A stretch of 64,000 nt of DNA from Mytilus californianus (GCF_021869535.1 NW_026262581.1:115382001-115446000), one strand, 5' to 3'; positions 31,870 to 53,808 are shown, counted from the first letter of the stretch. Notes: generated by a model from the sequence alone, not told the origin. Program-made: numbers and translations.

Positions 31870-32490
31870 AAAAAAAAAGTCAAAAGGTAACAAAGAGACA
31901 ATCCAAATTCATAGGTCCAAAAGAAACCGACAACACCATTGCAAAACCGAAATACGACGAGAAGACATACACCAATTCTCAAAACACTACATAGAAAAAC
32001 AAAAGACTCAGCAACACGAAGCCAACCAAATGGCAGAGGTGATCTCATGTGCTACAGAAGGGTAAACAGATTCTGCTCCACATTTGCCATCCGTCATGTT
32101 TCTCATCGTTAGTACACATTTGGTGATAAGTCTCATTCGGTGATGTCACAATCGTGTAAAATTTAGAAGACAGGATTGTGGCTACAATTGAAACATATCC
32201 GTGGTCATCTGTGATACAGATACCCCATAACGGCCAACCAACATATAGCGTCCGTAAAACTTTCAAATAGATGATCTCAACTTTAACGCATAGAACACAT
32301 GGTTCAATAGTTTTTTTTGTAAGCAGCAACCCTTTATCAATGGAGTCATTGTAGGAAAAGCAAGCTATCGAATATCGCATCAATTGAGAGATAAATAATC
32401 CATGTGCAGGCTTGTTAGAATTTTTGTCACTTAGAAATTGAAAATTAATAATTGAGAGCTGACCTACCCTCATTATCAATTTCTAGAGTC
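31870..32490 (-). mobile_element. Penelope-like RT C-terminus plus 3' non-coding tail
   Basis: Encodes NFQFLS...PAHGLFISQLMRYSIAC...DKGLLLTKK, followed by the GGAGCAGAATCTGTTTACCCTTC...GAGATCACC tail shared with copies at 42520, 44450, 51890 and 56480. Confidence 0.8.
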
Positions 32491-33411
32491 AAGAGAAGTG
32501 GATTGCAGGTATAACAATCTAATGACAATCTCCAAGTATGACTCCGACTAAAATCTTATTTTCGAAAATCTGAAACCATAATATTATACAGCATAGGCAT
32601 TTGTCTGATTTATTTTTACCTATATACCATTATATAACCTGAGGATACCTCCGTTTTTATTTGAGTTCGTGTTGTATAATTTTTAGTGACTGTTGTTTGT
32701 TGGTTCTTGGAATTCGTCATTGCATATTCTCATTTGTAATAACAGAATCTTGATATTTAATTATTTCTTTTTAATTACGAATATAACTAATTTCGAGGTC
32801 TCTTAAAACTTCACTTTGCATGTACACAGTCAGGAATCTTAAGAGTGGGACTTGTAGATATGTGTTTTTAAGTATCGTTTATAATAGAATAGCTTGATCA
32901 TTACTCATATTAAAGAATACAATATGTTCAAGTCGGGAATAGTAACTAACACTAAATACCGTGCATTGCTTCATGAATGTTTATATCTTACAGCAAATAA
33001 CGGATGCCATCAAAGTTTATGTACTATCTTTGATTAAACTTTTAAAGGAAGGATTGTTTTATCTCTGAAAGAGCCTGATTCTACCTTTAAACAGAAAACA
33101 CAAAGCCTCACAAAATATCGACCATAAAATTTTAATGAGCAATTACAGGAACAATAGGAAGTTCTGGAAATTGGAAATTACCACAAATATTGTTGGCAGA
33201 GATTTACCATGCTGGCAACGGTTCATGTTTAGGGAAACACATAAGATATCTGGAATTCTAAATTAAATAAAGATATGAAGTATTTACATAGCTGTCCGTT
33301 TAAAGAATCTTGTTCATTTCATTTGAGAACCGACAGGTGTTTACAAAGATAAACAATATCTTCCACATCTCGATTGTTTACACATGTTCTTCACGTAAAA
33401 TATTAAACAAA

Positions 33412-33440
33412 ATGGAATCCAGCGTTGATGTCGTGGACAG
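33412..33440 (+). CDS. Roc-COR gene putative exon 1 (MESSVDVVD + AG)
   Basis: ATG in AAAATGG context; strong donor AG|GTAAGT; phase 2 fits the next exon. The frame is open upstream to a possible acceptor at 33336, so the true start could lie further 5'. Confidence 0.65.
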
Positions 33441-36400
33441 GTAAGTTATTTTGTTTGTATGATAATTATGACTAACAAATGGTCGAAGATGATGTAATCC
33501 AAGGAAAAAATGCTATGAATTGCTTTACTAATTAAAAAAAAACTTTGTTATAATCTTATTGTATGCAAATTATGTAAAGGTGACTGATGGATTATCTGTT
33601 ATATCGATATTACCCCCAACCCTTTTAATATTTCTTTACACCCTATAATGTAAAGCACAGTTTCATTGGTGAGTATATGGAAAAATTACGGAGACAAAAT
33701 ATCACCTCACATTCAAAAGTCAACACCAAAAATCATTTTGAGATGTAGAAAAACTTTAGTGGCGATATATTTTAGAATGATCATCAGAGGTTGTCGTCTG
33801 TCATATTTGTTTTTGGTTAATTATTTTGTTATAAATTTGGCCGTTAGTTTTCTCAGTTGAATTGTTCCATATTTTTTTCATGTCGGGGTCTTTTATAGCC
33901 GACTATACGGTATGGGATTTTCTCATTCTTGAGGGCCGAACGGTTGCCTATAAATGTTTACATCCACTTTATTTGAACTTTGTCCTCTTCTCCTTATTTC
34001 TTTATATATGGAAAAATTGCGTAGACGAAATATAACATCAAAAGTCAACACCTAAAATCACGACATATTTGAAGATCTACGCCAATAGACAGTTTGCAGT
34101 TTAATTGATAAAAACGATATTTACCTTAATAAACAAAATTCACTATGACAATGATCACTGTTTAAAAATTATTATTGTGCGTTTAAGAACAAACACTTAG
34201 AACGAAATGCCATATTCGCGTATTACATATTAAAATGAATATTAAACATGTTTAAATATGTCTTATTCGCACAGTTTGCAGGGTAAACTCTTTTGAAAAT
34301 TTCTGAGGGTAAAATAATATCTGCTACATATTATAAAGCTAGTTTAGAATTTTTTATCGAAATGTTGACATAATCTACTATTTCTTGCTGAAAGCATGTG
34401 TTTTTGCTATATTGCGTCATTATCTTGTTTTCTTAATTTTCTAAATGTAATAAAAGATGTATTATAAGAAAACAGAAAATGTGCCAAAACTTAATTCAAG
34501 GGAACAAACATATGCTGTCTAAGGCAAATGTTATTTCAAAGTTACATATTCCCACAACTGTATGATTAGAGATTTCGATTGATAGATGGATAGGTGTTTA
34601 ACGTCCAGTGGCAACTACGTCATGCCAATGTTATTATGTACACGAAAATTGCTTTGTATCTGACCGATACCACGGGTCGGATGTTTTACCTTGCTAGTTC
34701 ACATGATTAACATCTGCAGGAAGACATGTTCCTACCCGGATGAATTATTCTGACTCCGAAAAGATAAGTCTTTCCTCTTATTTCTAAATTTGGTGCAACT
34801 CAAAACCATAAGTCGAAGAAAAATAGACAACACTACCCCCCAAAACGATGAAAAACTAGACAACACTATGCCCCAAAACGATAAAAAAAAATAGACAACA
34901 CTATGCCCCAAAACGATGAAAAAACAAACAGCAGTTCAAAAAAATACACGACAAAGAAAACTGATGATTGAGCAATAAAAACGGTCAACTCAGGTACTCC
35001 AGATCCATTTCATTTGACACTCGCCGTGTTACTCTTGTAAAATGTAAAACATAACATACTTAAGTAAGTAAGTAATGACTTTATTTAAAGAGAGTGACTC
35101 AATTAGCATTCACTAATCTACCTTGAGGCCCTCACTAAGAACAAACAGTACAAAGCTTACAATTTTGAACATATTATGTAGATGCAATATTCACGCTAAC
35201 TATACATTGTCGTCTGTAGAACAAGAGAAAATTAAATTCATATATATATATACATAAAATACAAAATCATTAGAATATATGAGTGAGTTGTTATAAATCA
35301 TTTACAGTCAAGAAATCTACACATCGTTGTTTAAAAGTGTCCAGGATTTCACAACATTTTATTTCATTTGGTAGTTTATTCCAAAATATTGAGGAGCTAT
35401 ATGTGAAAGATTACTTCATTGAATTTGTGTTCGGTCGCACAACAGCTAAATTATCATTTGCAGATAACCTTAGATTTCTACTATGTAGGTTAACAATTGG
35501 ACAACAGAGATCACACGACAAAGAAAACTGATGATTGAGCAATAAAAACGGTCAACTCAGGTACTCCAGATCCATTTCATTTGACACTCGCCGTGTTACT
35601 CTTGTAAAATGTAAAACATAACATACTTAATTAAGTAATCAGGTGCTTTATCGTTGAGAATTTTATGAACAAGAATAAGTTTATGATATGAAATTTTAGA
35701 TTTGAAATTTAACCATAGCTCTTTGAATAAATTTTTACTAGGCATCAAGTAAAAACTTGCCTGACTCGTGTACTAATCTTGATGCAAACTTTCTCAGTCA
35801 AGTACAGCTCAAGTACAGCTCACAGCTTAGTAAATATGAAGCTAAATAGTACATTGCTTTGAAATGTATGCACTTTGACTCAATTTGTTTTTACTAATAT
35901 TAATTAAATTTAATGGCGTCAGCTGTTGGTTTTATTGTCACATATTGCAAGATTTTCGCGATAAATAAATAATAAATAATAAAATTTGGTACGCTATTTT
36001 TTCTTTTTTTTAATTCAGGTTGAATGTTTTCGTGTTTGGTGGAACATTTTCTGAAAGACAAGATTTAATCCGAGTAACCTTAAGTGAATACGATAAAGGT
36101 CATATAAGTACATCCTCCAACTCAAAGGACAAAAATGATACAACTGTGTTTGTTGATGAGGAGGTTGAAATTTATACATTACCTGGTAAGGATATTATCT
36201 ATTAGAAAACCATTATCATTTTACTTTATATCAAACTTGGCGGAGAAGGTCATTTCAAAGTAGTATTCCAATTTCCTCTTTTGATTACAAACCTTACCTT
36301 ATTATATTCAAAGGTCAAAATTCTCTCTTAATATAAAAATAACAAGATGTGGTATGATTGCCAATGAGACAACTTAACAATGAAATAAATATTTTATCTC

Positions 36401-39400
36401 TTAGTAATGACTACTTGCCTTAATCGCACATGAAATAATCAGATCTATTTTTTAACAGCTTCGCTGCGGTACATACTATTGCAGTTCGCATATATAAGAT
36501 AAGATTTAGAAGACAACAGCATGAGAATGGAGGCGGGAGTGCTTCAATGAGATAACAACTAATATTGTTAGGAAAGATATCTTTCCACCATAAAATAGAG
36601 TTATAATAGTCACTGCACGTGCCCCAACAATGACTGAATACCATTCATTAGCAGGAGCTCTAAATTATTTGGAAATTTTGGACAAAGAAATAAAAAAAAG
36701 GCGTGGTTTTCATTTCATTATACGTTTAAACAAATGATTGTCCCAATCGTGTACATAAGAAATGGTGTTTGTATGAAATCGAGAGAAAAAAATGCTGATA
36801 TTTGACTTTTTAACAAATTATAAAAAATATGAAAATGGGACAACCAAAATCTTAAGTGGAAGAAGGTTTTACAAAGCAAAGACTGAAAAGATAGTCTTCA
36901 TCAATCAGTTACACATTGAAATATTCATTAGGCTCATGAATATATATTTAATTATATGACATACTTACTTATAGAGATTTTTATTTCAGTTAGCAAAATA
37001 GCAAGTTGTGAAATCTGGAATTTTTCTGACAAAAAGGTATGCTTTTTAACTGGCATGTATGATTTATGTGTGAACTTTAATTTCTTTTCGTCTTAAATTT
37101 AATGGAAACATTTTTTCATTATGTGTTAATCATTTAGTAAAAAAAATATATACATTACCAAACCGTACATAACTCCTTCAGACATTGGTTACCTAAGCCC
37201 ATTTTTGTTGTCAATCTTTTAACGTCTTTTTTTTTTTTTTTGCTCCTTGTGCTTAGCATTCAATCGGCTTTTTTCGTTGTTGTTGGTCTCGACAGTATTT
37301 GAAAAATAACCAGCAAAACAAAAGCTTTCAATGCCGCAAGCAAAATATTTTTGATCATTGCTCAACTGTTTGTGTTTTCTTGAAGATGCATGATGTAATG
37401 AATTTTCTGCTGTATCAAGCAAACTATAGTAAATTTATTAACGAATCAGGATTGTTTTACTTCCTCAATAAGAGCCTCATCGTTATATGCGCATAAAGTA
37501 AAGAGACGACACTGAAAACTGAAACTTTTGTTGTAATATATTTTCTTAAAGAATTAAAAGGTAGGTGATGCGGAAATATAGGCACATCCAACTTAGAATC
37601 CGGCATATATTGCCTCGCCACGTACGAGTTCGGCACAAGAATGGGTAGATATGTGTGCCGTCATTTCGGAAACACGCACTGTAGAATGCCCATTTGGAAT
37701 AAAAATCTGACTGGAAAGTTTCAATTACAGCAACTTTACTTTTTTGCATGGTCTTGAATAGCGAACTCATTTTGAAATGCAAACAACTTACGATGATATG
37801 AAAGGAAAACTCACAATAAGAATACTGACTGTACCACATTTCTTAATTTCTTTTTGTTTTACCGTCTTTCATGCATTGCAGGACACGCTTACCCTCTCGA
37901 CGGTCTCGTTCCTTTTGGGGGTCATGTAATTCCCTGAGGTTTTGTTTGTTACCTTGATTTTTCTTCAAAATTGATTTATGATATTTGAATATGGGTAAAC
38001 ACAGTAGTTGTTGAATAAATAGGTTGTAGCTAGGTTATCGTAACTCTAATAGATCGCTTTAACTATCAATGAATCTAAAGCTGAAATTTTTATTAAAAAG
38101 CATTTTCCTTGTGACAATTTTCTGAAATATTAACAGTGGCGCTATCCCTCACCCACAAATATTGTTGCTTAAATATTTTATATATACCATATACTTTTCA
38201 ACCAAAATTTCGATGGGTCAGAAGTGTCGCCATATATGAGAAAATAAAATAAGGTAGAAAATGATGAAGAATTTCTAGAAAAATAGACTTAAATGAAATC
38301 ACTTTCTATTTCAATCTGATACTTGTACAATTTATGAAGCCGATATACAATTTTTCTTATTATACTTTGAAAAATGATACATTTTGTAATACATACACAG
38401 TAGATTTACTCAAACAATTGAAGTTTGAAAAATGCACCCTTACAGGGCCGTTTATTGGGGTTACTGGCTTTACTCTTTTATCAGCAGTGATTACGTAGGT
38501 TTGACAGGTTCGAATTCTGGCAAAACGTATTTCTAAAGAGTACTTTCTATTTTCATTTTATTTTTGTATTTTGTAACTAGATGCAATACCAGCTAACATA
38601 AATGAATAGAGCCAAACAGCTGTGATGGAAATTAATTAATTGATAAAACACTTTCTTTATAAACATGACGTATTATCACATTTAAAATCTTTGAAAAAGG
38701 AATATATTATGTTTTTTTCAATGATAAATGTTTTACAGCTAAGCCAAGGAATATCTCAACTATTTATAAACAAGTGTGCCATTGTTATCATCATCGTTGA
38801 TAATGCAGACTTTAAAGCAACGGAAAAGATTGCCAGACTATGGAGAAATTTTGCTTTCAAGGTATATTTTGACATGTGATGATCCGAGAACGATAACAAA
38901 ATGTTTAGGATTGATAATATACACTGTTATCACTATCATATTAGTTATTTTTTTAAGTTGAAATACATGCAAGAATGTTAGCAGCAAGGCAATAACTACA
39001 TTCGTATTCAAAAGTATATCATATGGACGAAAGGGGCGAAGAGTATACGACAGTGAGACTGTAACTCAACAAAACAATAAAACCTCAAAACAAATATACA
39101 TATCCACAATGTCAAACAGCTCTATGTACGAAATAATTAGTTGTCTTATGGGGAGCCATAAGACAACTATCTACCAAAGTGTAAATGAAGAGGGTATACG
39201 CAGTTATAGGCCACCATGCGGTCTTCGACAATGTGAAAAAAAAACCCATACCGTATTGTCGACTATAAAATGTCACGACATGAAAAATGTGATACAATAC
39301 TAATGAGAAAACCAATTGTATAATTTATAACAAAACAATTTACGAAAAACAAATATGACAGAAAATGAACCAACGACAACCACTATACCATATTTCAAAT

Positions 39401-42400
39401 TCTTAATCACCCTGAGGCTAGACAAATTGTAAACTAAGCAAACGTTTCAAAGTCAATAGTCCACGACTGAGGGGGCGTGGTCAAATTATCTCAAATTGAA
39501 ATGAGATGATCCAATGCTAATACAACTGCAAACCAAATATCATTGACCTACCACTAGTGGTTCCTCATAAACTGACCTAATCACAAACTAATACATTGGT
39601 GATGACGACGCCGTCGGAAACAGCATGCCTATGTCTCGTTTTTGACTCCGTCAAGGCGAGACAAAAAAAGTATTGCACCAAAAAATGCTTGCAGATGCCG
39701 AAAGCTTATACGCTGATATAGAAATTCGTCTAGTCTAATGCAGACGGCTGCACTTTCTAGTGAATTTCACACAGCAACGCAAGTGCCAATAGACACATGC
39801 AACGCCTGAGATGACCTTGTTTGATGAATTTTACTACAGATAAAAAAGGAAAAATAAAAAAGGAAACATTTTAGTCGCGTGACTGTGTGAAATGATTTTA
39901 GTACCAAAAAATACAGAAGATAAGTATAATGGTTACCTTTAAAACACAAGAAAAAAAACCAAAAGATTATGTTAAATGACGCGTTTTAACCTTTTTTACT
40001 TCCTTAGTTAAATAACCATAAAATGTTCAAACGTTGCTTGCATGCATGTATTATCTATAGTCATTGAAGTTCAATCGTAGTTTTTAAATTATTCTTTTGA
40101 CCGAGTGTGGATTCGTATGGCGGGTGATGCATGTATAGCAGGATACGCTTACCCTGTCGACACACCCGTTCTTGCTCCTTTAGGAGTTCATGTGATTCCC
40201 TCAGTTTTTGGTTTGTTACCTTAATTTGTATTCTAAGTCGATTTATGAGATAAATATCGTTGTTTTAAGTTAATATAAGATAAGAAAATGTGGTATAATT
40301 ACCAAGTTAATATTCTAGGAAATACCTTCATAAATCATAATAAATTTTTGACAGCAAAATAGATGGAAAAATAGTTAGAAAAGTTTTCTTGTTTATCCAG
40401 GGTATTCAACATGTTATTATAGCAAATATATCATCAATTGTAACGAGCGATGTCGTACAGCAGACAGTGCAGATCTTTGAAGCTCTTGATGAAAGTCTTA
40501 ACACATTCAAGCAAAGTCAATCCCAGTAAGTAAAGTTGTAGTTAATTTAATTTTTTATAAACTTCACATTTAAATTTTTCCTTATAGACCAAAACGTTTG
40601 TCAAATCAAACGGTGAAAATGTTATCATACTTTAAAAATTTGTTTAGATTAAACAGAAAACGGGACAAACATTAATGAAAAAGTAAAAATACAATGAAAA
40701 GCTTCAATTTTGTAAACCATCGATGCAAGTAAATTCTCTTACCCAAAACGTTGACTGGGTGCGGAATTTAAAATGTTTCCCAAGTACAGAGAATAAACAA
40801 GACTATATATGATAGAAACATCACTGACACATTCAGAAATAAAACTTTCGTTCAACACAACGCAGAAAACTAAGTCAAAAACAACACGAACCTCCGCTGA
40901 AAGAAAAGTTACGTGAAAGCTTTCAAAATGTACTAGTTGCATGTGAGACAAATACCATTAATGCAATATCAAGTATATAAGTGGGAGAGAAAAATTTCTT
41001 CACCACTCAAGTGAAAGATCAAGGACGCACGCAATGCATAACATTGATTTGTGTTTTATACTTGATTTTAGAGTTAAAGAAACTCCAAGAAATTACCACA
41101 AATTACATACTGCTGAAGAAAAGGTAGGTAAATTAAACATGCTTTACTCTCCAAAATCGAAAAAGGTCGATGTTATACGAAATATAAGGGAATGTATTGT
41201 ATTATATAAATCAATTCCACGTTATTATGATTGATTCAGTGAATTTTCATTTTCAATATGTCGTTGTCTCTTGACAACGCATTATAAACAGCAGATGAAA
41301 ATTAACATTGACAGATTAAGGTAAAAATAATGAAAAACGGGAAACGAAAATTATCGTATTGTACCGGAAATGAGCACATTTTGCATTTGATCGCTATATT
41401 AGTAGTGCATTCGTGTTTTTTTTTAAAAGTTCTGTCAAATGAATACGAGTTTTCTTTAAGCAATTAACAAATTTCCCAGCAATTCGCGCTTTTTCTTGAA
41501 TATACATGTAAAAAAATTTGTGTAAAATAAATACTCTCTAAGACGTACATCAAAACATTTGGTTTGATTTTCAACCTTCTAACAATGAGCCAAATTTGTA
41601 TGTTTATTTTAATAATGAAAAAAGACATACACACAGTATTTTGGTTCCTGTGCAGTCTCTTGGTTCCGAAAAGTGAAATACAATGGAACAATGAAACTTT
41701 TAATATATTCATGAAAACAAACTAATTTACATCCTCGTCACTTGGTCTCTGTTGGCTAGTAGTCTCATTGGCAAATCAAACCAATCTTCTTATATTTTTT
41801 ATATTTGTTGAACCTTCATATAAACATAGAAATCATGTGTATTGCTTACAGGACGCACTTCCCGCTCAAGATATATATAAATTTGTAAGATTACTAAAAT
41901 AAAAAATGACCAGAGTAAGTATTACATTTTGATACTTGAAATTGACATAAAAACACTAATAGATAATTACTACCAAAGAAACTGATTTCAATCTTTTACA
42001 GGGGTTTCTGACAATATTAACAACTCTTTTAAAAGAAGAAAAAGACAAAGTGATTACAGAAATAGACGATCTTACAAGAATAAAAAATACTGTACTCAAA
42101 CAAAGAAAGGATGTCGTGTTCAGTTCTATACATGAATATCAAAATATTGTGGCACTAGTGAACATTGGAAATACGTTGAACCATTTAACCGCAAAGGTAA
42201 TTGTTCCAAAAGTTTGGTATTTTCGTAATGTAATTGAAATATACGATGTGCAATAATATAAATAGGAATAATTCTGGTAACACCAACCTAATAGTCCGCG
42301 CTGGTGTGGCGGTCATTTTCTGTATATTCAGCGTTCATGTAAAAATCTTTCAAAATACTTATAATAAAAGTTTTTTTCAGGCGTTGATGAACACAATATT

Positions 42401-45400: not shown

Positions 45401-48400
45401 AGCGTTCGATATTCATCTATTTCATAATCCATTTTTATCAACAATTCGTGAAGCATTAACAATTTTTTGTCGATAAATGTACAATAGTTGTTATTTATTA
45501 GGAAATGTACTAAGATTGTGTGCGAGTTGAGGATTGAAGACATATACTCGTTTGTGGATAGGTATGAAAAACTGTCGTTTTGTGTCAGTTTGAAAGTTGA
45601 CTGTTTAAAAAATAATGAAAAATGTTAATACTTGAATGAGCATGTATGATAATTGGAGTTAATTCCTTTCAGCAATGTAGAACGAGTTTCAGACTGAAGA
45701 AATAACCCCTCATTTTTTTAGTTGGTCATTTTACGTTTTTATGAAACCTTTTCTGAATTGTTGACTAATTTAGGTATCAGTTAAGTTTCTAGATCACACA
45801 AAATACACCAGGTAAATACTTTAGCAAATTGGATTAAATTACACTCAATGATGTGGGGTGATGTTCTTCTAGTGTTGTGTTCAACTGTTTTGGTTCTTAA
45901 ACATCCTTGGCTTTCAAATATTCGGCTTTAAGCGTACCTGATGAAGGAAAAGCTCTTCGGACGCATAAAACTTAAACGTGTTGTTTTGATTTTTTCGAAC
46001 GTAAAATACCGATTTCTGTGCGCATGAAATGTGTTTCTGTTAAAATCTTCTGTGTGTACGATGGAGAAAGTTCATGAAGCCAAAAAACAACAAAAAAAAT
46101 TAAAAAAAAAATTACGTTTTAGAGCATTAAAATCATACTGCTCTAAACAGTCAAAACATGATGTAGCTACAAGTAACAATGCCTTAGGTATTTGTAACAC
46201 TTAGAAAATGTATCATTCAATCAAGCAATACTTTACATTACCCACACACTGGACCCTGGACAGAATGGTAACCTCGGAACTGAAAGTTCGGCTGCAGCAT
46301 TACCTCACGGTTGTATTCGATCGAAACGTATGATTACGATTTCGGGTCAACAGAACGGTCAGTACCAAAAGTTTGGGAATCCAAATGTATAAAACGTCTG
46401 AAAACATAAAAAACTAGAAGGCTTTAAAAGAACAGCCAAACTGTATTAGGTCTACTTTTCTAAGGATTTTGCAACATTTTGTAAGCACAATTAAAACACT
46501 TTTTACCGGGACGAACAGATTCTGATCATGATGCAATATCAATATGAACCTTTATGTATAAACTATACCGATTCTCTGAGCCAGATTTTGAAAATAGGAA
46601 ATTTACAGACAAAAACAAATCATCAAAGATACCAGGCTTATAAATTTAAACGTCACACGCGCGTTTCGTCTATAAAATACTCATTAGTGAAGCTCTAATA
46701 AAAAAAGTTTAAAGGCCAAATAAAACACGAAATGATGTTAAAGTTACCAACTGTAGGCGTTCTAGAATGAGCAGAATCAATACCGTATAGCAAGCTATGA
46801 AATGCCCCGAAATGAAAACGAGAAAACTAACGGCCTGATTTATGTACAAAACAATAAACGAAATACAAATATGATATACAGCAACAAACGACATCCCTGA
46901 ATTACAGGCTCCTAAATTGGGACAGGTACTTACAGAATGTGGCGGGATGAAACATGTTTCGGGGGGGGGGGGGCAATTCTCTAACCTTAGACAGAGTTGT
47001 CAGCCAAAATGGTCCTAGCTTGTAAACCAAATTAAATCTTATCCGTACGTCTACGTTGGGTGGCTTTCCTTTGATCTTTAATTCATATCCTTTTTATTTA
47101 CTTTCAGGTTTATATCTATATATCAACACAGAATGAGTCTTTAGAGTATTTTGTCCGAACAGATATTGATTTATATCCTAGTTTTGAAGAAGCATGTAAA
47201 AAACTTTGGATGACTGTTGGTTTAGCACTGGATTGTTTTTTAAATCACGTTTCAATTTGGCCAGAACTTAATTATCAGGTAACAAATTAGATAAACGTTA
47301 TAGCAAGTTTGATGGATTTATATACTTACCAACATTAAATGATTAATATTCCTTTCTTCATTCATAAGTTCGTTTTGGGCGGCTAGGCATTTGCGGTATT
47401 TAGCAAAATCATTACTTCAAGATGCAGCAAATATTAAATAATTTGAGATATTTATTATGCATATTAATTCTATAACACTAGACATGTTTCATTATTTACC
47501 AAGAGGGGTTTCCATAATCAATAAAGGTAAGTTTTGAAATATTCGTCTGATATGTACGTAAATCCTCAGATTATTACTTTCGTTTTCACAAAAAAAAGTC
47601 AAAGAAAATGTTACAATCTACCGTTATGTATATATATATAAATAAGAAGATGTGGTATGATTGTCAATGAGACAACTTTCCACAAGAGACCAAATGACAC
47701 AGAAATTGACAACTATAGGTCACCGTACGGCCTTCAGCAATGAGTAAAACCCATACCGCATAGTCAGCTATAAAAGGCCCCGAAATGACAAATGTAAAAT
47801 ATTTCAAACGAGAAAACTAACGGCCTGATTTAAGTACAAAATAATGAACGAAAAATAAATATGATATACAGCAACAAACGACAACCTCTAAATTACAGGC
47901 TTCTGTCTTGGGACAGGCACATACAGAATGTGGTGGGGTAAAATTAGTTTGAAGGAGCCAACCCTCCCCTAACCTGGGACAGTGGTGTAACATTACAACA
48001 TAAGAACAAACTGTAAAAATCAGTTGAAAAGGGCTTGACTAATCAGATGGACACAAAGCAGAAATACATCTAACAAAAACACAGAGTGAACGTGGCAGGG
48101 TACTTATACATCACCACAACAAAAAGACATTGAGTACAGATCTGAGAGTACTCGCAGTTACTGACAGCTAGTTCAAAGCCAATAACAACTAATAAAAAAA
48201 TCATGCATCTAAGACTAAAATATCAATCAGTACACATCCAACATCCAATGGATTTAGTGTAAATACGTCATTAACAGTCAGAGAAAAAAACATGACCTTG
48301 TAAAATGCCAAGATACAGGTATCGACAGATTGTAGAGCCATGCATGTGCATATGTATATAAAAATACTATTTAGTTTGATTTTAATTTACTGATAACAAA

Positions 48401-51400
48401 ATCAATATTAATACCAATAAAAACAATATTCAAAGATCTAATTATAGTGTTGAATTGGTAACCTTTTAGAATAAGTTTATTTAAAGAATCGATAAGTTTA
48501 CATAGTTGCTTTTCATAAACTTGGTAAAAGGGATAGTTTTACATTTTTGTCCTCGGAAATTAGCAACAGAATTAGCCAAAAAGATCCTCATTCGCTTAAG
48601 ACATCTTGTTCCAAAATATATTTTTGGAAAGGCTGTAAGTCATATTCAAATATCAGTGTTAAGGTCTTAAAAGAAAATAATTTTGTAGTTTTTGAAAATT
48701 GTTCCATAATTGCAGAAAGCTTTAGTACCAAAATCATGAATTTTACTGACATCAGACAGAATAATATCTTGTGAAAATGGAAATAATGCTTTTAGTAGAT
48801 TAATAATACTTTTTCATTTTAAAAATCAAGTCGCCTTAATACCATCTCAGTACGAGTTCACAAATTAACTACTTAATAGACAGAACATAAACATTACCTC
48901 AGCTCATTGTTTAGCCTGGGTTAGAATATGACAAGGATTCGTATGTATAAAAATTTTTAAATTTGGAATATTTTTCGTCAGGTAGATTTGTTACAAAAAC
49001 GTGTCTAGTAAATATTAGAAAGTTGATTAACAACTTTCGTCATTTTTTCATATTTTTATTTAATTTGAATTAATTTGAAGGTATACCTGTCTGCTGATGG
49101 AGAACAATTTCGATCAAGCAGTGTAATTGGTGCATGTTCCTTGCCCTCCATGTTGACAAAAAGATACAATAGGAAAGATAACACGGAAGAAGAATTAGAA
49201 ACGAAGGTTAAATTATTGTTTCCATTTCAAGGTAATAATGTAATAATCTTCATCTTTTATTAACTTTAGATTAAACGCGAAAAATACTATGTGTGGGAAA
49301 ATAATAAGATGTCAACTCATGTATTTGTTTGTAAAAAAAATGTCTGCTAGCAAATTAAGATGTCAAAACTGCTCATTTGTACAACTAGTAAATTATATCT
49401 AAAATATATATTTGAAGTCTACGCTTATATGTTTATAATATTGGCATTATGTTCGAGTGGCCAAGCTATACAAAGTCGCTTATCTACAGACGACTTTAAT
49501 TGCATTCCGTGCCAAGGTATTCAACTTTTGTGAATATGACTTCGTACGGAAAGATGGTTCGGTCTGCCAGAGTCGATTCAGAATAGTTTTTGCTTGCCCG
49601 ATACTTGGTACAAAAGATCATTATAATAAGTGTCGTACCTTTTTTAACTCCAATATGTTTCGAAACGTAGCAGAAAAAAATAAGAAGAAATACAGCAAGT
49701 TCTTCCTTAACTTTTTTGTAATGGGAAAGACATTAATGACCCTAATAAATTTACATGCATGGTTAAAATCATTTTCACAGGCTAACGTTTTTTGCCAAAT
49801 CCAGTCAACTTAAACATTCAAATCACAGATAATCACATGCAGAATAAACCGACATGTCTTTGTAAAAAAAAACCGGAAAATCTCAAACTCAAATGACACA
49901 TCATAAAATAAGGTAACAGTAGTTTTAAGACAAATTAAGTTATCAAACACAAACTGAGGGAATCGCATGAACTCCAAAAGAAGCGAGACTGGGCCCGGTG
50001 CGTCGACAGGATCCGCATCTCATGCTATGCATGCATCACCCGGTCTGATAATTCAAAATATCACAATCGGGAATAGGACAGAATCGGTAAAATTGCAGGT
50101 CAGACGACATTTTGCGAAAACATGTAGCTAGCAGGTTGAGATGAACCTATTTGTGATGATTTCAGTCGTTTTTCCTTATAACTTGGTTTCTGTAGTTTTT
50201 ATAGCATACTCCTGCTAATGAAGTCCGAACAGTGTAAACATGCAAATCAGTTGAGATGTGTAATTGCCACATGGGACAGAGGTTAAGTAACTGCTGATAA
50301 ATGGGAAGTTGACGATTGGAAAATTGAAATATTATGTTGTCATAGATTCTAGTTTGAGGTCGCCCATCTCTGTCAATATCGAGGAAAAGATCAAGATATG
50401 ACGTTCACTGGGAAATATGAGATACACTCACTTACTAAAACGTGGATTATTGAGTGACAGGTCATCATCAAAATATCTGAATGTGAAATTAAAGAACTTT
50501 GCAAGATGTGTTCTCTTGTTTATTTTTGAGAAGGTTTTATTATTTATTATTTATTTATGCATTTCTCTGTGCTGAGCGTTCTTGCGTTTGTTTGTAATGT
50601 ATTCCTGTCACGTAGTGTTGTCATTTTAGCGATATTTTTTAACATTGCCATATAAGCGGAAGGTTTGGCTAGCCATAAAACCAGGTTCAACCAGTCATTT
50701 TTTCCTAAAATGTCCTGTACCAAGTCAGGAATATGGCAGTTGTTATCAAATAGTCCGTTTCTATGTATGTTGGCCTTGGTTTTTGTTGCAGTTCAGTGTT
50801 TCTGTTGTTCCGTTGTTTTCCTTTTATAGTTGATGTGTTTCCCTCGGTTTTAGTTTGTAACCCGGATTTGTTTTCTCTTAATCGATTTAGGACTTTTGAA
50901 CAGCGGTATACTACTGTTGCCTTTATTTGTATGAATTCTGCTTCATATGAGTGCATAAACAAGTCGGAATTTTTTGGAATCAGTGCAGTTCTTCACAAAG
51001 TAAGATTTTGTCACAATCTACAGGACGAAATTGTATCTACGAACCCCATTTTTGTAGAAAAAATGCTCTGTTTAAAGAGACGAAGTATTCAATTTTTCAT
51101 TTGAACATTGGGAATAATAGTGTACAGCGTAGAAAATCAAAAATGATATTACTGCAAAATTGTAAAGATTGTTACTGAAGATTTTACGGTAGATCTTTAG
51201 AATTTTGAAGAATCCAGATCTGATTGACGCCGCATGTTGAATATAATACCCCATCACAATATTTTAGGAAGCTATCTTTAATTGTCAAAATAACAGCGGT
51301 AAGAACTTTTGAAAGATGTTTAGTCAAACATTTCGACGAGCCGATTATATATCGTTCTTTATAAAGATTTTTGTGAAGTTTAGATATCACGTATTAAAGA

Positions 51401-53808
51401 CGGGAGATCTTCATAAACGAGACAATGTAAAAAGATTCAAATCTAGATACAAAAAACCTAAACATCGGACATTTAAAAGAAAAGCTTTTGCCAATACGAT
51501 CTTCCAAAAAATAGGGACTGATAGTAGCAAATCTTTTTTCAAATCATTGATATATAAATTTCGCTTAAAGTTGGTATGTGCGATTTTTTTCTTCTTTTTT
51601 GATAAAAAATGTATACTCACATTATTCAAGATTCTACTATGGCCCTGGTATTCATATTTGATCTTTATTTACATATTAAGGGATATTGTATCATCTACTT
51701 TATTACTATTTGGTGAATATACCCGAGGAAAAACCTACGCTCCTTTACATGTCCGATTTTAAAAGTGCTCCGTTTTCGTGTGTTTTATTTAAAATGCCGT
51801 TTGTACGAAAATTACCGGTTGTATGGTTAGATGATTTCTTGAATTTGACCTACCGAATTTAGACTTATCACCGGATTTGTACTTACATGAGCAACACTAC
51901 GGATGCCACATGTGGAGCAGGATCTGCTTACCCGTCAGGAGCACCTGAGATCACCACCAGTTTTGGTGGGGTTCGTGTTATTCAGGCTTTAGTTTTCTAT
52001 GTTGAGTTTGGTGTACTGTTGTTTGTCTGTTGGTCTTTTTCTTTTTTAGCCATGGCGTTGTCCGTTTATTTTCAACTATGAGTTTGAATGTCCCTTTGTT
52101 ATCTTGTGCCTCTCTTTTGTATAGTCAGTACAAACACGATGTTAGAAAAGCTATTAAAAGCAATTAGATCATTTTTTCCAAATTTCTAGAGGACTTTGAA
52201 TTGTGCTCTTAAAGTACGATCTCACCACACGATTACATATTTTAGTGAATTTTTTTTTTTTAAAAAGGCAACCTGTATTACCGAACGAAGAACTATTGTT
52301 TCTGAAAAAAGGAAAATAACAGACACAGAAGATAAAAGTGATTATAAGGTTGATATGTGTATTTTAGATTTTGAAGTTACAGATGAAAAAGATGTAATTC
52401 AACAATGGACACTTTATTTAAAAAGAGAAACAGGGAGGTCATTGGAAATAGATATAAAAGAAACACAGCCGGCTGTAGAATTAGAAATGATAAAACCAAA
52501 AACAAGTATAAAGAAAAACAAGGTATTTTCATTTTTCAGATACATATGAGTATTGATAGCTCACTCTTTTGAAAGAGATAGGCTGATGAATAACCTGATA
52601 ATTTACATATAGTTGTCAACATTAATATATTTGTAATTTTAATTTTAATATCTATAAATGAGCACGAATTACAAATAAGGGTTCATCTCTAAACAGATGA
52701 TCTTATACTGCTTGTTATAATGCTTACAGTTAATTTCAAATATTTTTTTTTGGAAATTAGATTACTATTTATTTCATTTATAAACTGTATTTATGTTTTA
52801 CTGGTTTTTTTTCAAAATATAATTTAAGCGTAAAGATATTACTTGGGATATAAAGACCGCTGATAAACATACTAGCTCGAGTACAGAAAGGATACCTTCA
52901 CAATCGAATATTAAACCAGTCAAATGTAGTACAAACGATGCTTATCTACCATTGAGAATAGATAAACCTACAGTTAAACAAAAGTCTACGAAAACAGAGG
53001 ATGTAGCAAAAACTTCAACTGAGCCCACATATGATAATAACATAGGACGTTGTAAAGTAGATGTTGAAATGGATATTCAGAAGGTGGTTGGATCATTTGT
53101 TGCGACTATCTTAGCTACAGCTGTGGCTGCTTATATAGGAGAAGAAAGTGGTAGACGAGGAAAATGGACAACGTACCAGGTAAAGCTATGTTTGCATTAT
53201 AGAAAATTGGTGTAGGTGTGCAAAAAAAGGAGTGATATTTGCGATAACATAAGTATTTTTATTTTAATGATATAAAAAGAAACATTTAGCAAGAATCAAA
53301 ATGAGACATAATAAGATTATCTTTTGTTCCGATGATATATAATGAATATACTTTAGGCTTAAAAAAGTTTAATTATATCGTCATGAAAGAGGTAAGCAGG
53401 CGCTTTTCTTGCTTATTTTAATCATAAATTCTTGTATGTGATTAAAAAAAAACGAGGTTGCTGACATCAGTCAATGTATTTCCAACATTTCTTTTTATTA
53501 ATTTTTGCATTTAATGCATTTTGACACATTTTTTATTCTCAATTTCATTTTCTGTATAATGAATGTTTCTTTTATTATTATCCAAGGCATCAGTTGCATC
53601 AGAAATGGCAGAAGCTATCATGTTTGTTAATTCAAATGACGTCATGGCCGCAGCAAACACAATTATAAACACCGTAGAAAAAGCTGAAAAACCAGACTCT
53701 TCCAATACACGTCAATGTTGTCTAGATGGATCTTTATGTTACTGTGGGCATAACAAAGATCATAAGGAACAGAGTAGTAAATTCAGTTCAATTTGTACAC
53801 TATTGTAA
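33412..53808 (+). CDS. Roc-COR (ROCO-like) protein with degenerate GTPase motifs and C-terminal CaaX; ~15 exons, ~830 aa: join(33412..33440,36019..36185,36990..37036,38739..38861,40401..40525,41072..41123,42002..42196,42987..43226,43555..43740,44891..45073,47108..47278,49081..49231[or 49239],52268..52522,52829..53179,53587..53808)
   Basis: Exons 1-12 chain with consistent phases (2,1,0,0,2,0,0,0,0,0,0) and GT-AG sites, and exons 13-15 chain in phase 0. Roc-like motifs: RLNVFVFGGTFSERQDL, EIWNFSDKKLSQGISQLFINKCAIVIIIVD, QHVIIAN. COR-like motifs: LNHLTAKGIIL...FICVNPQLFLKLV, MERFGLL, FPQGLPPGCLERYI...WRSGILL, WPELNY, VKLLFP. The domain assignment is by eye from family motif spacing. The exon 12/13 junction is unresolved. 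Confidence 0.78.
34818..34925. repeat. 3 x ~34-bp tandem repeat (AGACAACACTA.GCCCCAAAACGAT.AAAAA)
   Basis: Directly visible; lies in a tail-type repeat remnant. Confidence 0.8.
34946..35630 (+). repeat. Identical 118-bp direct repeats (34946-35063 and 35513-35630)
   Basis: Base-by-base comparison shows ACACGACAAAG...CATACTTAA identical in both copies, offset 567. Confidence 0.93.
35064..35512 (-). mobile_element. 5'-truncated L2/Crack-like LINE 3' fragment with (TTAC)n tail
   Basis: The minus strand encodes ...RPNTNSMK*SFTYSSSIFWNKLPNEIKCCEILDTFKQRC..., the typical ORF2 C-terminus. This is followed by a 3' UTR, AATAAA and TTACTTACTTAC. The insert is flanked by identical 118-bp direct repeats. 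Confidence 0.85.
36019..36185 (+). CDS. Roc-COR exon 2 (degenerate P-loop region, RLNVFVFGGTFSERQDLIRVTL...IYTLP)
   Basis: Polypyrimidine tract plus TTCAG; donor GTAAGG; phase 2 to 1. Confidence 0.85.
36990..37036 (+). CDS. Roc-COR exon 3 (VSKIASCEIWNFSDKK; switch II-like)
   Basis: Acceptor ATTTCAG; donor AG|GTATGC; 47 nt. It converts phase 1 to 0 exactly as needed, and WNFSD aligns with the Roc motif WDFAG. Confidence 0.85.
38739..38861 (+). CDS. Roc-COR exon 4 (LSQGISQLFINKCAIVIIIVD...RLWRNFAFK)
   Basis: Acceptor TTTTACAG; donor AG|GTATAT; 123 nt; phase 0 to 0. Confidence 0.85.
39440..39668 (+). mobile_element. Probable 3' portion of another Helentron-type non-autonomous element
   Basis: Ends in the hairpin TGTCTCG-TTTTT-GAC-TCC-GTC-AAGG-CGAGACA followed by an A run; short (GAC)n precedes it. 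Confidence 0.5.
40120..40250 (+). mobile_element. Related tail-type repeat family (copies 37860-37990 +, 43860-44030 +, 49930-50050 -)
   Basis: GGCGGGTGATGCA...GGATACGCTTACCCTGTCGAC...GGAGTTCATGTGATTCCCTCAG is shared between copies. Confidence 0.7.
40401..40525 (+). CDS. Roc-COR exon 5 (GIQHVIIANISS...FKQSQS)
   Basis: Acceptor GTTTATCCAG; donor GTAAGT; phase 0 to 2. Confidence 0.85.
41072..41123 (+). CDS. Roc-COR exon 6 (QVKETPRNYHKLHTAEEK)
   Basis: Acceptor GATTTTAG; donor AG|GTAGGT; 52 nt; phase 2 to 0, bridging exons 5 and 7. Confidence 0.75.
42002..42196 (+). CDS. Roc-COR exon 7 (GFLTILTTLLKEEKDK...TLNHLTAK)
   Basis: Acceptor CTTTTACAG; donor AG|GTAATT; 195 nt. Confidence 0.88.
42520..42750 (+). 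mobile_element. Non-coding Penelope-associated tail repeat (other copies 51850-52120, 56485-56725)
   Basis: GGAGCAGGAT.TGCTTACCC.T..GGAGCAC.TGAGATCACC...GGGGTTCGT.TTGCTCAGTCTTTAGTTT is conserved between copies. Confidence 0.75.
42987..43226 (+). CDS. Roc-COR exon 8 (GIILSHG...FICVNPQLFLKLV...LLPLLWQ; COR-A-like)
   Basis: Acceptor CATTTTAG; donor AG|GTAGTT; 240 nt open. Confidence 0.88.
43555..43740 (+). CDS. Roc-COR exon 9 (DLLSNKEQ...MERFGLLMP...DLKP)
   Basis: Acceptor TATTTACAG; donor GTAACT; 186 nt. Confidence 0.87.
44045..44650 (+). mobile_element. Penelope-like RT C-terminus plus 3' tail
   Basis: GACAAAAGAGATTATTACAATTTT...CCTGCATATGGA...GATACGATATTCAAGGGCTTG corresponds to DKRD..F..VN.PFL.SN.P.APAYG...IRYSRAC. 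It is followed by the same tail. Confidence 0.8.
44891..45073 (+). CDS. Roc-COR exon 10 (SLNWYE...FPQGLPPGCLERYIG...WRSGILLRIND; COR-B-like)
   Basis: Acceptor CATTTTACAG; donor GTAAGT; 183 nt. Confidence 0.9.
45930..45965 (+). ncRNA. Degenerate hammerhead-like repeat, second family (related copies 16135-16160 +, 24943-24988 -, ~61045-61095 +)
   Basis: AGCGTAC-CTGATGA-AGGAAAAGCTCTTC-GGACGC: the stem I arms GCGT../..ACGC flank an intact CUGAUGA, but stem II or GAAA is damaged in every copy. Confidence 0.5.
46645..46697 (-). ncRNA. Degenerate type I hammerhead ribozyme (retrozyme/Penelope-associated fossil)
   Basis: The minus strand reads GAGCTTCA-CTAATGA-GTATTTTATAGAC-GAAA-CGCGCG-TG-TGACGT. 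The core layout matches CUGAnGA...GAAA with a palindromic ACGCGCGT stem III, but the core has G>A and the cleavage triplet is GUG. Confidence 0.7.
47108..47278 (+). CDS. Roc-COR exon 11 (VYIYIS...VSIWPELNYQ)
   Basis: Acceptor CTTTCAG; donor AG|GTAACA; 171 nt. Confidence 0.88.
47640..48480 (+). mobile_element. Abundant unclassified non-autonomous interspersed repeat, family A (longest copy)
   Basis: Begins ATAAGAAGATGTGGTATGATTG.CAATGAGACAACT...; includes GGCTCCTGACTTGGGACAGGCACA...CCTGGGACAGTGGTGTAACA. Other copies: 2020-2345(-), 3751-4540(+), 9620-10250(+), 23800-24000(+), 33775-33975(-), 39085-39390(+), 46740-47000(+), 50630-50930(-), 58340-58970(+). Confidence 0.88.
49081..49231 (+). CDS. 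Roc-COR exon 12 (VYLSADG...KVKLLFPFQ)
   Basis: Acceptor AATTTGAAG. The donor AG|GTAATA at 49232 is phase 1; an alternative AT|GTAATA at 49240 is phase 0. Confidence 0.8.
50150..51620 (-). mobile_element. Penelope-like RT, larger decayed fragment interrupted by another repeat
   Basis: Encodes SKLHKNLYKERYIIGSSKC.TKHLSKVLT...CGVNQIWILQNSKDL (51390-51190) and FNFTFRYFDDDLSLNNPRF...LDID.DG..QT.IYD (50500-50330). Confidence 0.82.
52268..52522 (+). CDS. Roc-COR gene exon 13 (ATCITERR...SIKKNK)
   Basis: Long poly-T tract plus AAAAAG acceptor; donor AG|GTATTT; 255 nt open. Confidence 0.72.
52829..53179 (+). CDS. Roc-COR gene exon 14 (RKDITWD...VVGSFVATILATAVAAYIG...WTTYQ)
   Basis: Acceptor AATTTAAG; donor AG|GTAAAG; 351 nt open in AT-rich DNA. 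Confidence 0.8.
53587..53808 (+). CDS. Roc-COR gene terminal exon 15 (ASVASEMAE...RQCCLDGSLCYCGH...FSSICTLL*)
   Basis: Acceptor TTATTATCCAAG; phase 0; stop TAA; ends in CTLL (CaaX). Confidence 0.8.
   Translation, partial: ASVASEMAEAIMFVNSNDVMAAANTIINTVEKAEKPDSSNTRQCCLDGSLCYCGHNKDHKEQSSKFSSICTLL

What the first reader, a model, noticed from the sequence alone, without database searches (positions are those of the whole stretch)
33412..53808. Stand-alone Roc-COR-like protein without LRR/ankyrin/kinase modules, hidden across 15 exons
Seen: short exons scattered over 20 kb splice in phase into a ~830-aa protein that starts only ~10 residues before a Roc-like beta1/P-loop strand and continues through COR-like motifs. 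The ORF track shows only disconnected pieces and misses several exons (e.g. 36990, 40401, 44891, 47108). Established: animal ROCO proteins (LRRK1/2, DAPK1, MFHAS1) normally pair Roc-COR with repeat and/or kinase or death domains. Inference: this is a minimal, lineage-specific ROCO derivative with an unrelated C-terminal tail, and is the best candidate for an undescribed system in this window.
Basis: partly seen in the sequence, partly recalled or inferred. Interest (0 to 1): 0.85.

Follow-up and report, generated by a model that had tools for sequence, protein, structure and literature searches.

The report
Divergent lipid-anchored pseudo-Roc-COR mussel gene
A real 15-exon mussel gene encodes a 798-residue, very diverged relative of the LRRK2-type Roc-COR module that has lost its GTP-binding motifs and ends in a lipid-anchor signal; it is a conserved molluscan variant of a known family, not a new system.

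Summary
Fifteen + strand exons (33412-53808), all with GT-AG borders, join into 798 aa (not ~830). The product is letter-for-letter RefSeq XP_052095995.1, 'uncharacterized protein LOC127731129' of Mytilus californianus. RNA contigs from two runs confirm the exon 2-3 and 3-4 junctions.

Pfam and PDB sequence searches stay below threshold. Profile-profile comparison with 56 verified prokaryotic Roco proteins is clear: E 8.8e-10 over 341 columns, controls 0.04-0.7. Mytilus alone (1.7e-7) and the gastropod Elysia alone (4.2e-8) each give it. COR-A and COR-B are solid; the Roc part is weak on its own.

The G1, G3 and G4 motifs are degenerate, so it is probably a pseudo-GTPase. dN/dS of 0.21 (COR-A 0.09) shows a working gene. 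No upstream coding exon is likely: a 1-nt indel 8 nt before the ATG breaks the upstream frame between species.

The tail is part of the family, not another transcript. Elysia homologues keep its helices and a C-terminal CaaX box (CTLL / CSVF).

It is wrong on 'lineage-specific' and on 'unrelated tail'. The same scan noted the degenerate motifs and the CaaX cassette on this window before. Verdict: a new variant of a known kind, of moderate interest.

The parts
33150..33500 (+). Conserved non-coding block around exon 1; probable core promoter, 5'UTR and start of intron 1
   Evidence: It is 94-100% identical between this window and M. edulis L001, against 55-80% in flanking non-coding DNA. A 1-nt indel 8 nt upstream of the ATG breaks any upstream reading frame. 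An in-frame stop lies at 33301-33303. Sense-orientation reads of run X21 cover it at depth 1-2.
33412..33440 (+). Exon 1 (aa 1-10, MESSVDVVD..); start codon in AAAATGG context
   Evidence: The same N-terminus is seen in M. edulis, M. trossulus, M. galloprovincialis and M. californianus models.
36019..36185 (+). Exon 2 (aa 10-66): Roc-like beta1, degenerate P-loop GGTFSERQ, alpha1, switch-I region
   Evidence: The joint to exon 3 is seen in RNA contigs of X1 and X4.
36990..37036 (+). Exon 3 (aa 66-81): beta3 and degenerate G3/switch II (WNFSDKK in place of WDFGGQE)
   Evidence: Joints on both sides are seen in RNA contigs.
38739..38861 (+). Exon 4 (aa 82-122): Roc-like alpha2, beta4, alpha3
40401..40525 (+). 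Exon 5 (aa 123-164): beta5 and degenerate G4 (NISS in place of NKxD)
41072..41123 (+). Exon 6 (aa 164-181): short poorly conserved linker exon
   Evidence: It is present in the M. edulis, M. galloprovincialis and M. trossulus models.
42002..42196 (+). Exon 7 (aa 182-246): helical start of COR-A
42987..43226 (+). Exon 8 (aa 247-326): COR-A core, with a family-specific insert (RFW...VLEDIP.xG...LPLLWQD) that is the block best conserved between Mytilus and Elysia
43555..43740 (+). Exon 9 (aa 327-388): end of COR-A (EMERFGLL matching the Roco LM..F.LC motif) and the linker to COR-B
44891..45073 (+). Exon 10 (aa 389-449): COR-B start (FPQGLPPGCLERYIG; GWRSG matching Roco WRxG)
   Evidence: Pfam COR-B is sub-threshold at E 0.09-0.5. 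hhalign supports it.
47108..47278 (+). Exon 11 (aa 450-506): COR-B beta-sheet and long helix
   Evidence: pLDDT 75-89.
49081..49231 (+). Exon 12 (aa 507-557): end of COR-B (..LFPFQ)
   Evidence: LFPF is invariant in Mytilus and Elysia.
52368..52522 (+). Exon 13 (aa 557-608): start of the K/T/S/D/E-rich, probably disordered linker
   Evidence: dN/dS of the linker is 0.96.
52829..53179 (+). Exon 14 (aa 609-725): rest of the linker, then a hydrophobic helix at aa 694-712 (Kyte-Doolittle mean 1.95)
53587..53808 (+). Exon 15 (aa 726-798 plus stop): Ala-rich helix conserved in Elysia, Cys cluster CC..C.C, CaaX box CTLL
   Evidence: dN/dS of aa 681-798 is 0.235.

Best explanation
The gene encodes a strongly diverged descendant of the ROCO (Roc-COR) family. 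Its layout is a Ras-like Roc-type domain (aa ~10-170), then COR-A (~182-388), then COR-B (~389-556). There are no N-terminal repeats and no kinase or death domain. A ~125-residue disordered linker follows, then a conserved C-terminal cassette. The cassette holds a hydrophobic or amphipathic helix pair, a Cys cluster (Mytilus) or polybasic stretch (Elysia), and a CaaX box. Shown here: homology to Roc-COR, loss of the canonical G1, G3 and G4 motifs, purifying selection, and conservation of the tail in a second molluscan class. Inferred: the Roc-like domain no longer works as a GTP switch (a pseudo-GTPase). Inferred: the protein is geranylgeranylated at Cys795, with palmitoylation of neighbouring Cys as a second signal, and so sits permanently on a membrane. 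Inferred: there it acts through its well-conserved COR module as a nucleotide-independent dimerising scaffold or adaptor, perhaps pairing with other members of the expanded molluscan ROCO repertoire.
For: Gene model and expression. Homology by hhalign of the family against 56 prokaryotic Roc-COR segments, of which 10 of 10 tested carry Pfam Roc+COR-A and 7 of 10 also COR-B: Prob 96.5, E 8.8e-10, 341 columns running from switch II through COR-B. Mytilus alone gives 1.7e-7 and Elysia alone 4.2e-8. The reversed control gives 0.37, shuffled 0.3-0.7 and block-shuffled 0.04-0.07. The independent tool run gives Prob 93.6, E 2e-7. COR alone gives 2.2e-7 (Mytilus) and 3.2e-6 (Elysia), with cross-domain negatives at 0.1-0.45. 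Pfam Roc is the best hit of the N-terminal piece in three proteins (E 0.0066, 0.026, 0.034), and COR-B is the best hit of the right piece in Mytilus and Elysia. The ten best family-carrying ESM-Atlas feature neighbours of residues 1-560 all share Roc/COR families (first hit 0.95), and several are molluscan clusters. Motif loss: GxxxxGKT becomes GGTFS(E/D)RQ, WDFGGQE becomes WNFSDK, and NKxD becomes NISS. Selection: dN/dS is 0.21 overall, COR-A 0.09, COR-B 0.15, Roc-like 0.33 and C-terminal cassette 0.235. Tail: pairwise alignments of P0014 with the Elysia proteins run from COR-A to the last residues. The ends are CaaX CTLL in five Mytilus species and CSVF in two Elysia species. The tail exons lie downstream on the same strand in M. 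edulis too. With Roco rows added to the alignment, AF2 gives pTM 0.68, and Foldseek puts LRRK1, LRRK2, C. tepidum RocCOR and M. barkeri Roco2 on top at 1.7e-16 to 1e-8.
Against: No Pfam family reaches its gathering score, and COR-A is not seen at all by hmmscan. PDB sequence searches find nothing. AF2 with orthologues only failed at pLDDT 30.6. The better model used Roco sequences in its alignment, so its LRRK-like fold is partly built in. The Roc part alone is weak: hhalign E is 0.003 for Mytilus and 5.2e-5 for Elysia, and residues 1-57, including the P-loop region, are not aligned by the profile. Elysia keeps DxxG (WDIPG), so the loss is not uniform. Arg at the P-loop Lys position might still contact phosphate. 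Nucleotide binding, prenylation, membrane location and dimerisation are untested. The exon 12-13 junction and the transcription start were not seen in reads. Depth was 1-2, and sense reads extend upstream of the conserved block across 9 upstream ATGs.
Confidence: 0.65

Rival explanations
1. It is still an active, atypical nucleotide-binding Roc. A non-canonical P-loop (Arg in place of Lys) and other residues would keep GTP or another nucleotide bound, so the protein would be a lipid-anchored ROCO GTPase switch rather than a pseudo-GTPase.
For: A basic residue (R23) sits at the P-loop Lys position and Gly17/18 are kept. Elysia retains the G3 DxxG (WDIPG). The Roc-like domain is still under purifying selection, with dN/dS 0.33.
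Against: G1 lacks the second Gly and the Ser/Thr that binds Mg. G3 Asp and Gly are replaced in Mytilus. G4 lacks the Lys and the base-specifying Asp. The Elysia P-loop is shortened and carries no GK[ST]. The Roc-like part has the highest dN/dS of the folded domains.
Confidence: 0.12
2. The gene model is incomplete at the 5' end. Further upstream exons (LRR, ankyrin or other) would belong to the transcript, so the protein would not be stand-alone.
For: Sense-strand reads of X21 lie upstream of exon 1 as far as the edge of the laid stretch at 32950. No start pile-up or exon 1-2 joint was recovered at depth 1-2.
Against: An in-frame stop lies at 33301-33303. A 1-nt indel between M. californianus and M. 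edulis, 8 nt before the ATG, breaks the upstream frame, while the first ten residues are identical in all Mytilus models that include exon 1. The ATG has a good context. The conserved block at 33150-33500 looks like a promoter and first exon. The Elysia crispata model also starts at the beta1 strand. No LRR or ANK ORF lies on the + strand upstream, where there is a minus-strand retrotransposon remnant instead.
Confidence: 0.08
3. Exons 13-15 form a separate gene, as in the older M. edulis and M. galloprovincialis annotations (249-aa products). The Roc-COR protein would then end after exon 12.
For: Older annotations split the locus into 532/565-aa and 249-aa products. The exon 12-13 junction was not covered by the one read-laying run allowed. 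In M. edulis, intron 12 is 12.5 kb and holds a minus-strand ORF.
Against: Four RefSeq models (798, 799, 794 and 723 aa) join them. Both Elysia proteins carry Roc-COR and the homologous tail in one chain, and pairwise alignments run through to the C-terminus. Phase 1 is shared at the junction, and LFPF(Q/K)(D/G) is conserved. The split 532/565-aa models end by reading into the intron.
Confidence: 0.07
4. The resemblance to Roc-COR is spurious, and the protein belongs to an unrelated alpha/beta family.
For: All curated-threshold tests fail.
Against: Two lineages at 24-27% identity each match the Roco profile on their own at 1e-7 to 1e-8, in the right order and over more than 320 columns. Controls stay at 0.04 or above. 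Pfam and ESM-Atlas point to the same family.
Confidence: 0.03

Closest known systems
Prokaryotic Roco proteins (e.g. Chlorobium tepidum Roco, PDB 3dpu/6hlu; Methanosarcina barkeri Roco2, 4wnr)
   Same: The order is the same, Roc then COR-A then COR-B, and it is matched column by column from switch II to the COR-B sheet. Structural anchors are conserved: W116, G314, M342 and the WRxG turn. These are among the top Foldseek hits of the model.
   Different: There is no N-terminal LRR. G1, G3 and G4 are degenerate, whereas all 56 Roco segments used keep GK[TS] in the P-loop and, by the way they were fetched, WDFGGQ(E/D). COR-A carries a ~30-residue family-specific insert. There is a 240-residue tail with a CaaX end.
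LRRK1 / LRRK2 (human ROCO kinases)
   Same: They share the Roc-COR supradomain. They are the best Foldseek matches: 8e05 at 1.7e-16 and 8fo9 at 1.3e-15 (with the caveat on the alignment used).
   Different: This protein has no ARM, ANK or LRR repeats, no kinase and no WD40. LRRK2 is recruited to membranes by Rab GTPases (PMC6337361). This protein instead carries its own putative lipid anchor, and its Roc domain lacks the GTP-binding motifs.
MFHAS1/MASL1 and DAPK1, and the molluscan 'COR domain-containing' proteins with Death or TIR domains
   Same: These are animal ROCO members. Molluscs have many Roc-COR combinations (Aplysia: PMC9334734). Molluscan clusters with Roc, COR-A and in some cases Death domains are among the nearest ESM-Atlas neighbours.
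   Different: Those proteins are recognised by Pfam and carry LRR, death, TIR, EF-hand or kinase modules. This family carries none of these and falls below every Pfam threshold.
CaaX-anchored small GTPases (Ras/Rho hypervariable region); comparison from general knowledge
   Same: It has a C-terminal Cys-a-a-X, with Leu at X (the GGTase-I type) in Mytilus. The box is preceded by a palmitoylatable Cys cluster in Mytilus or a Lys-rich stretch in Elysia.
   Different: The anchor is attached to an ~800-residue Roc-COR protein through a long linker and helices, not directly to a 20-kDa G domain. Lipidation was not tested.
Pseudo-GTPases (G-domain folds without nucleotide-binding motifs); comparison from general knowledge
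   Same: The G-domain-like fold is retained, the G motifs are lost, and purifying selection continues.
   Different: None is known to me within a Roc-COR tandem. A full-text search for 'Roco proteins' together with 'pseudoGTPase' found no paper. That is a limited search and does not prove absence.

Membership tests
ROCO (Roc-COR) family | COR domain (COR-A plus COR-B) immediately C-terminal to the G domain, shown by profile homology | tested here: met
   hhalign gives E 8.8e-10 for the whole module and 2.2e-7 (Mytilus) or 3.2e-6 (Elysia) for COR only. The tool run gives E 2e-7. Controls are at 0.04 or above.
ROCO (Roc-COR) family | Pfam Roc (PF08477), COR-A (PF16095) and COR-B (PF25497) at their gathering scores | tested here: not met
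   The best Roc score is 17.1 bits against a cutoff of 27 (E 0.0066). The best COR-B score is 13.1 bits against a cutoff of 27. COR-A is not reported.
ROCO (Roc-COR) family | Ras-like Roc G-domain fold N-terminal to COR | tested here: inconclusive
   The continuous hhalign alignment starts at switch II (residue 58). Roc-only E is 0.003 (Mytilus) and 5.2e-5 (Elysia). Pfam Roc is the top hit in three proteins. The AF2 model has the beta-alpha pattern and matches Rab and Roc structures, but it was built with Roco rows in the alignment.
ROCO (Roc-COR) family | Canonical GTP-binding motifs G1 GxxxxGK[ST], G3 DxxGQ and G4 [NT]KxD | tested here: not met
   The motifs read GGTFS(E/D)RQ, WNFSDK and NISS in all Mytilus sequences. 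Elysia keeps DxxG only.
ROCO (Roc-COR) family | Accessory LRR, ANK, WD40, kinase, death or TIR modules, which are usual but not defining | tested here: not met
   No such Pfam hit was found in P0014, P0009-type orthologues or the Elysia proteins, even at E up to 10. ESM-Atlas gave no usable hit for the tail.
CaaX-prenylated proteins | C-terminal Cys-aliphatic-aliphatic-X tetrapeptide at the very end of the ORF | tested here: met
   The end is CTLL followed by stop at 53806-53808, and it is identical in five Mytilus species. It is CSVF in two Elysia species.
CaaX-prenylated proteins | Actual isoprenylation and membrane association | not testable with these tools
   This needs metabolic labelling or localisation experiments.
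Pseudo-GTPases | No nucleotide binding or hydrolysis | not testable with these tools
   Only the motif loss is shown. Biochemistry is needed.

The most novel reading that the evidence does not exclude
A conserved molluscan class of constitutively lipid-anchored pseudo-Roc-COR proteins. They would use the COR dimer interface to dock or regulate the expanded death- and TIR-domain ROCO receptors at membranes. That would make them a ROCO counterpart of pseudokinase or pseudo-GTPase regulators, working without a GTP cycle.
Probability: 0.12. Interest if true: 0.65.

Novelty: new variant of a known kind. Interest (0 to 1): 0.4.

Why it matters
This family is listed as 'uncharacterized' with no domains in four Mytilus RefSeq annotations and two Elysia genomes. 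The work here places it in the ROCO family and shows how far Roc-COR can drift below Pfam's reach. If the inferences hold, it is a natural Roc-COR that has given up the GTP switch yet keeps COR under strong constraint, and that brings its own membrane anchor. LRRK2, by contrast, needs Rab proteins to reach membranes. Such a protein would be a handy comparison for asking what the COR scaffold does on its own. It would also be a piece of the poorly understood ROCO expansion in molluscan signalling and immunity. It is not a new kind of system.

Tried and rejected
Steps that gave nothing useful:
- Pfam on single exons gave only noise, plus COR-B at E 0.1.
- ESM-Atlas on one exon and on the tail gave no usable hit.
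- Pfam on full-length proteins gave nothing at threshold.
- PDB sequence searches with a single protein, an alignment profile and the Roc piece gave nothing relevant.
- tblastn of residues 1-560 against plasmids, meant to catch bacterial Roco genes, gave only chance hits to gabD.
- A third homologue search with the Mytilus+Elysia profile found no further relatives.

Structure prediction:
- AF2 with orthologues only gave pLDDT 30.6 and was unusable, so no fold search was run on it.
- The second AF2 run used Roco rows in the alignment. I treat it as descriptive only, because that alignment favours the Roco fold.

Readings considered and rejected:
- A true transmembrane protein: the 694-712 helix is hydrophobic in Mytilus (KD 1.95), but its Elysia counterpart is not (1.31, and it contains charged residues).
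- A pseudogene: rejected by dN/dS.

Full report
**Gene model.** The window is AT-rich eukaryotic DNA. Stop-free + strand segments between 33.4 and 53.8 kb carry canonical splice signals. An exhaustive HMMER search with one exon (window:43456-43770) found a 532-aa Mytilus edulis protein at 92% identity. Cluster look-ups then gave full-length RefSeq models in M. edulis (799 aa), M. trossulus (794 aa) and M. californianus (798 aa, XP_052095995.1, 'uncharacterized protein LOC127731129'), plus an N-terminally shorter model in M. galloprovincialis (723 aa). Joining 15 exons of the window gives 2397 nt, which is 798 aa plus a stop, identical to the M. californianus protein. After shifting two borders by one base, all introns are GT..AG. 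Only its length estimate (~830) is about 30 residues too high.

**RNA evidence.** Contigs of two RNA-like runs carry the spliced joints exon 2>3 and exon 3>4 with GT..AG ends. Stranded raw reads of a 2026 RNA-seq run lie in sense orientation on exons 1, 2 and 4, at depth 1-3. Expression is low. The exon 1-2 and exon 12-13 joints and the cap site were not recovered.

**The 5' end.**
- An in-frame stop lies 111 nt upstream of the ATG.
- The ATG context is AAAATGG.
- The first ten residues are identical in every Mytilus model that includes exon 1.
- A 1-nt indel between M. californianus and M. edulis, 8 nt upstream of the ATG, breaks any upstream frame.
- A block at 33150-33500 is 94-100% identical between the two species, against 55-80% around it. 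It looks like a promoter plus first exon.
- Upstream of it lies a degenerate minus-strand non-LTR retrotransposon (RVT_1), and no LRR or ANK ORF.
- The Elysia crispata homologue also begins at the beta1 strand.

Upstream coding exons are therefore unlikely (about 8%). Sense reads further upstream, across nine upstream ATGs, remain unexplained.

**Is it Roc-COR?** Curated-threshold tests fail:
- No Pfam family reaches its cutoff on any full-length member.
- PDB sequence searches find nothing.
- AF2 on the orthologue-only alignment gave pLDDT 30.6.

Sub-threshold signals all point the same way:
- Pfam Roc is the best hit of the N-terminal piece in M. californianus (E 0.0066), Elysia (0.026) and M. 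trossulus (0.034).
- Pfam COR-B is the best hit of the matching piece in both genera.
- The ten best family-carrying ESM-Atlas feature neighbours of residues 1-560 all share Roc/COR families (first hit 0.95), and several of them are molluscan clusters.

For a proper test I fetched prokaryotic loci with the back-translated WDFGGQE motif. I extracted 56 Roc-COR segments. Of ten tested, all carry Pfam Roc and COR-A and seven also COR-B, at E 1e-7 to 1e-49.

Profile-profile results:

| Comparison | Result |
|---|---|
| Family vs 56 Roco segments | Prob 96.5, E 8.8e-10, 341 columns, residue 58 (before switch II) to 475 (COR-B) |
| Mytilus alone | E 1.7e-7 |
| Elysia alone | E 4.2e-8 |
| Reversed control | 0.37 |
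| Column-shuffled controls | 0.3-0.7 |
| Block-shuffled controls | 0.04-0.07 |
| Session comparison tool, separately built alignments | Prob 93.6, E 2e-7 over COR-A/COR-B |
| COR only | 2.2e-7 (Mytilus), 3.2e-6 (Elysia) |
| Roc only | 0.003 (Mytilus), 5.2e-5 (Elysia) |
| Cross-domain negatives | 0.1-0.45 |

So COR is solid and Roc is weak on its own. With 30 Roco rows added to the alignment, AF2 gave pTM 0.68 (COR-B pLDDT 75-89). Foldseek then ranked LRRK1, LRRK2, C. tepidum RocCOR and M. barkeri Roco2 first, at 1.7e-16 to 1e-8. I treat this as consistent but not independent, because the alignment contained Roco sequences.

**Degenerate GTPase motifs.**
- G1: GxxxxGK[TS] is GGTFS(E/D)RQ, with Gly>Glu, Lys>Arg and Thr>Gln.
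- G3: WDFGGQE is WNFSDK(K/E).
- G4: NKxD is NISS.
- Elysia has a shortened P-loop without GK[ST], but keeps DxxG (WDIPG).

A pseudo-GTPase is the most likely reading; nucleotide binding itself is untested.

**Selection.** Nei-Gojobori dN/dS between this window and M. edulis is 0.21 over 542 codons. By region:

| Region | dN/dS |
|---|---|
| Roc-like | 0.33 |
| aa 171-246 | 0.37 |
| COR-A | 0.09 |
| COR-B | 0.15 |
| Linker 557-680 | 0.96 |
| C-terminal cassette 681-798 | 0.235 |

The gene is functional, and COR is its most constrained part.

**Tail and distribution.** A region-restricted search found Elysia crispata (877 aa, E 6.5e-27) and E. chlorotica (772 aa) proteins. Pairwise alignments with them run from COR-A to the C-terminus. 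Identity is 34% in COR-A and 26-31% in the last ~115 residues. The most conserved block is an insert in COR-A that bacterial Roco proteins lack (RFW..SL..VLEDIP..G..R..LPLLWQD). Mytilus ends in a Cys cluster plus CTLL. Elysia ends in a Lys-rich stretch plus CSVF. Both are CaaX boxes with a typical 'second signal'. That comparison rests on general knowledge of Ras/Rho anchors. In M. edulis the tail exons lie 12.5 kb downstream on the same strand. The tail is therefore part of the family, and the family is not Mytilus-specific. The 694-712 helix is hydrophobic enough for a membrane helix in Mytilus (1.95) but not in Elysia (1.31), so I do not call it a transmembrane segment.

**Mechanism (inferred).** The protein is a permanently membrane-tethered, nucleotide-independent Roc-COR scaffold. 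The COR module would mediate dimerisation, as in other Roco proteins (PMC6337361), or pairing with ROCO paralogues. Such paralogues are numerous in this genome according to other first-reader notes, and in Aplysia (PMC9334734).

**Comparison and verdict.** It is a homologue of ROCO proteins. It lacks their GTP motifs and accessory domains and adds a CaaX tail, so it is a new variant of a known kind. It is already present in databases as an uncharacterized protein. Limited full-text searches found no paper that names Roco proteins together with 'pseudoGTPase', and none describing a natural CaaX-bearing Roc-COR protein. Interest is moderate.

Noticed in passing
window 33150-33500: A non-coding block around exon 1 is 94-100% identical between M. 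californianus and M. edulis, while neighbouring intron and intergenic DNA is 55-80% identical. It is more conserved than synonymous sites of the gene (dS 0.36). It is probably promoter, 5'UTR and an intron-1 element.
   Followed up: partly
window 25264-29650 (- strand): A frameshifted non-LTR retrotransposon remnant. The ORF at 26222-26566 hits Pfam RVT_1 (E 2.3e-9), and endonuclease- and ORF1-like ORFs lie around it.
   Followed up: partly
window 36330-36374 and 33800-33990: Short high-copy repeat pieces in introns 1 and 2 reach enormous depth in RNA contigs (summed word depth up to ~19,000). They show 'opposite strand' joints between 33982 and 36374. They are inverted copies of an abundant, transcribed dispersed element and are unrelated to the gene.
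   Followed up: no
window 32048-32482(-), 42234-42710(+), 44327-44669(+), 51835-52164(+), 56441-56776(+): Several ORF fragments share the same peptide strings (..HDGCHMWSRICLP.., ..EHMRSPP.FGG.., ..LVFYVVF..). This is a dispersed repeat family with at least five copies in the window, mostly in introns of this gene.
   Followed up: no
L001:27729-29399 (- strand), M. edulis: Intron 12 is 12.5 kb in M. edulis against 3.1 kb here. In M. edulis it contains a 556-aa single-exon minus-strand ORF without Pfam hits on record, probably an inserted mobile element.
   Followed up: no
M. trossulus proteins P0012, P0006, P0013: M. trossulus RefSeq has three loci of this family: 794 aa full-length, a 349-aa 5' half and a 457-aa 3' half. 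There may be a second copy, or a split or haplotig model.
   Followed up: no
window 32950-33148: Sense-orientation RNA reads (depth about 2) lie upstream of the conserved block, over a stretch with nine upstream ATGs. They could be a long 5'UTR, another transcript or repeat-derived reads. This is unresolved.
   Followed up: partly
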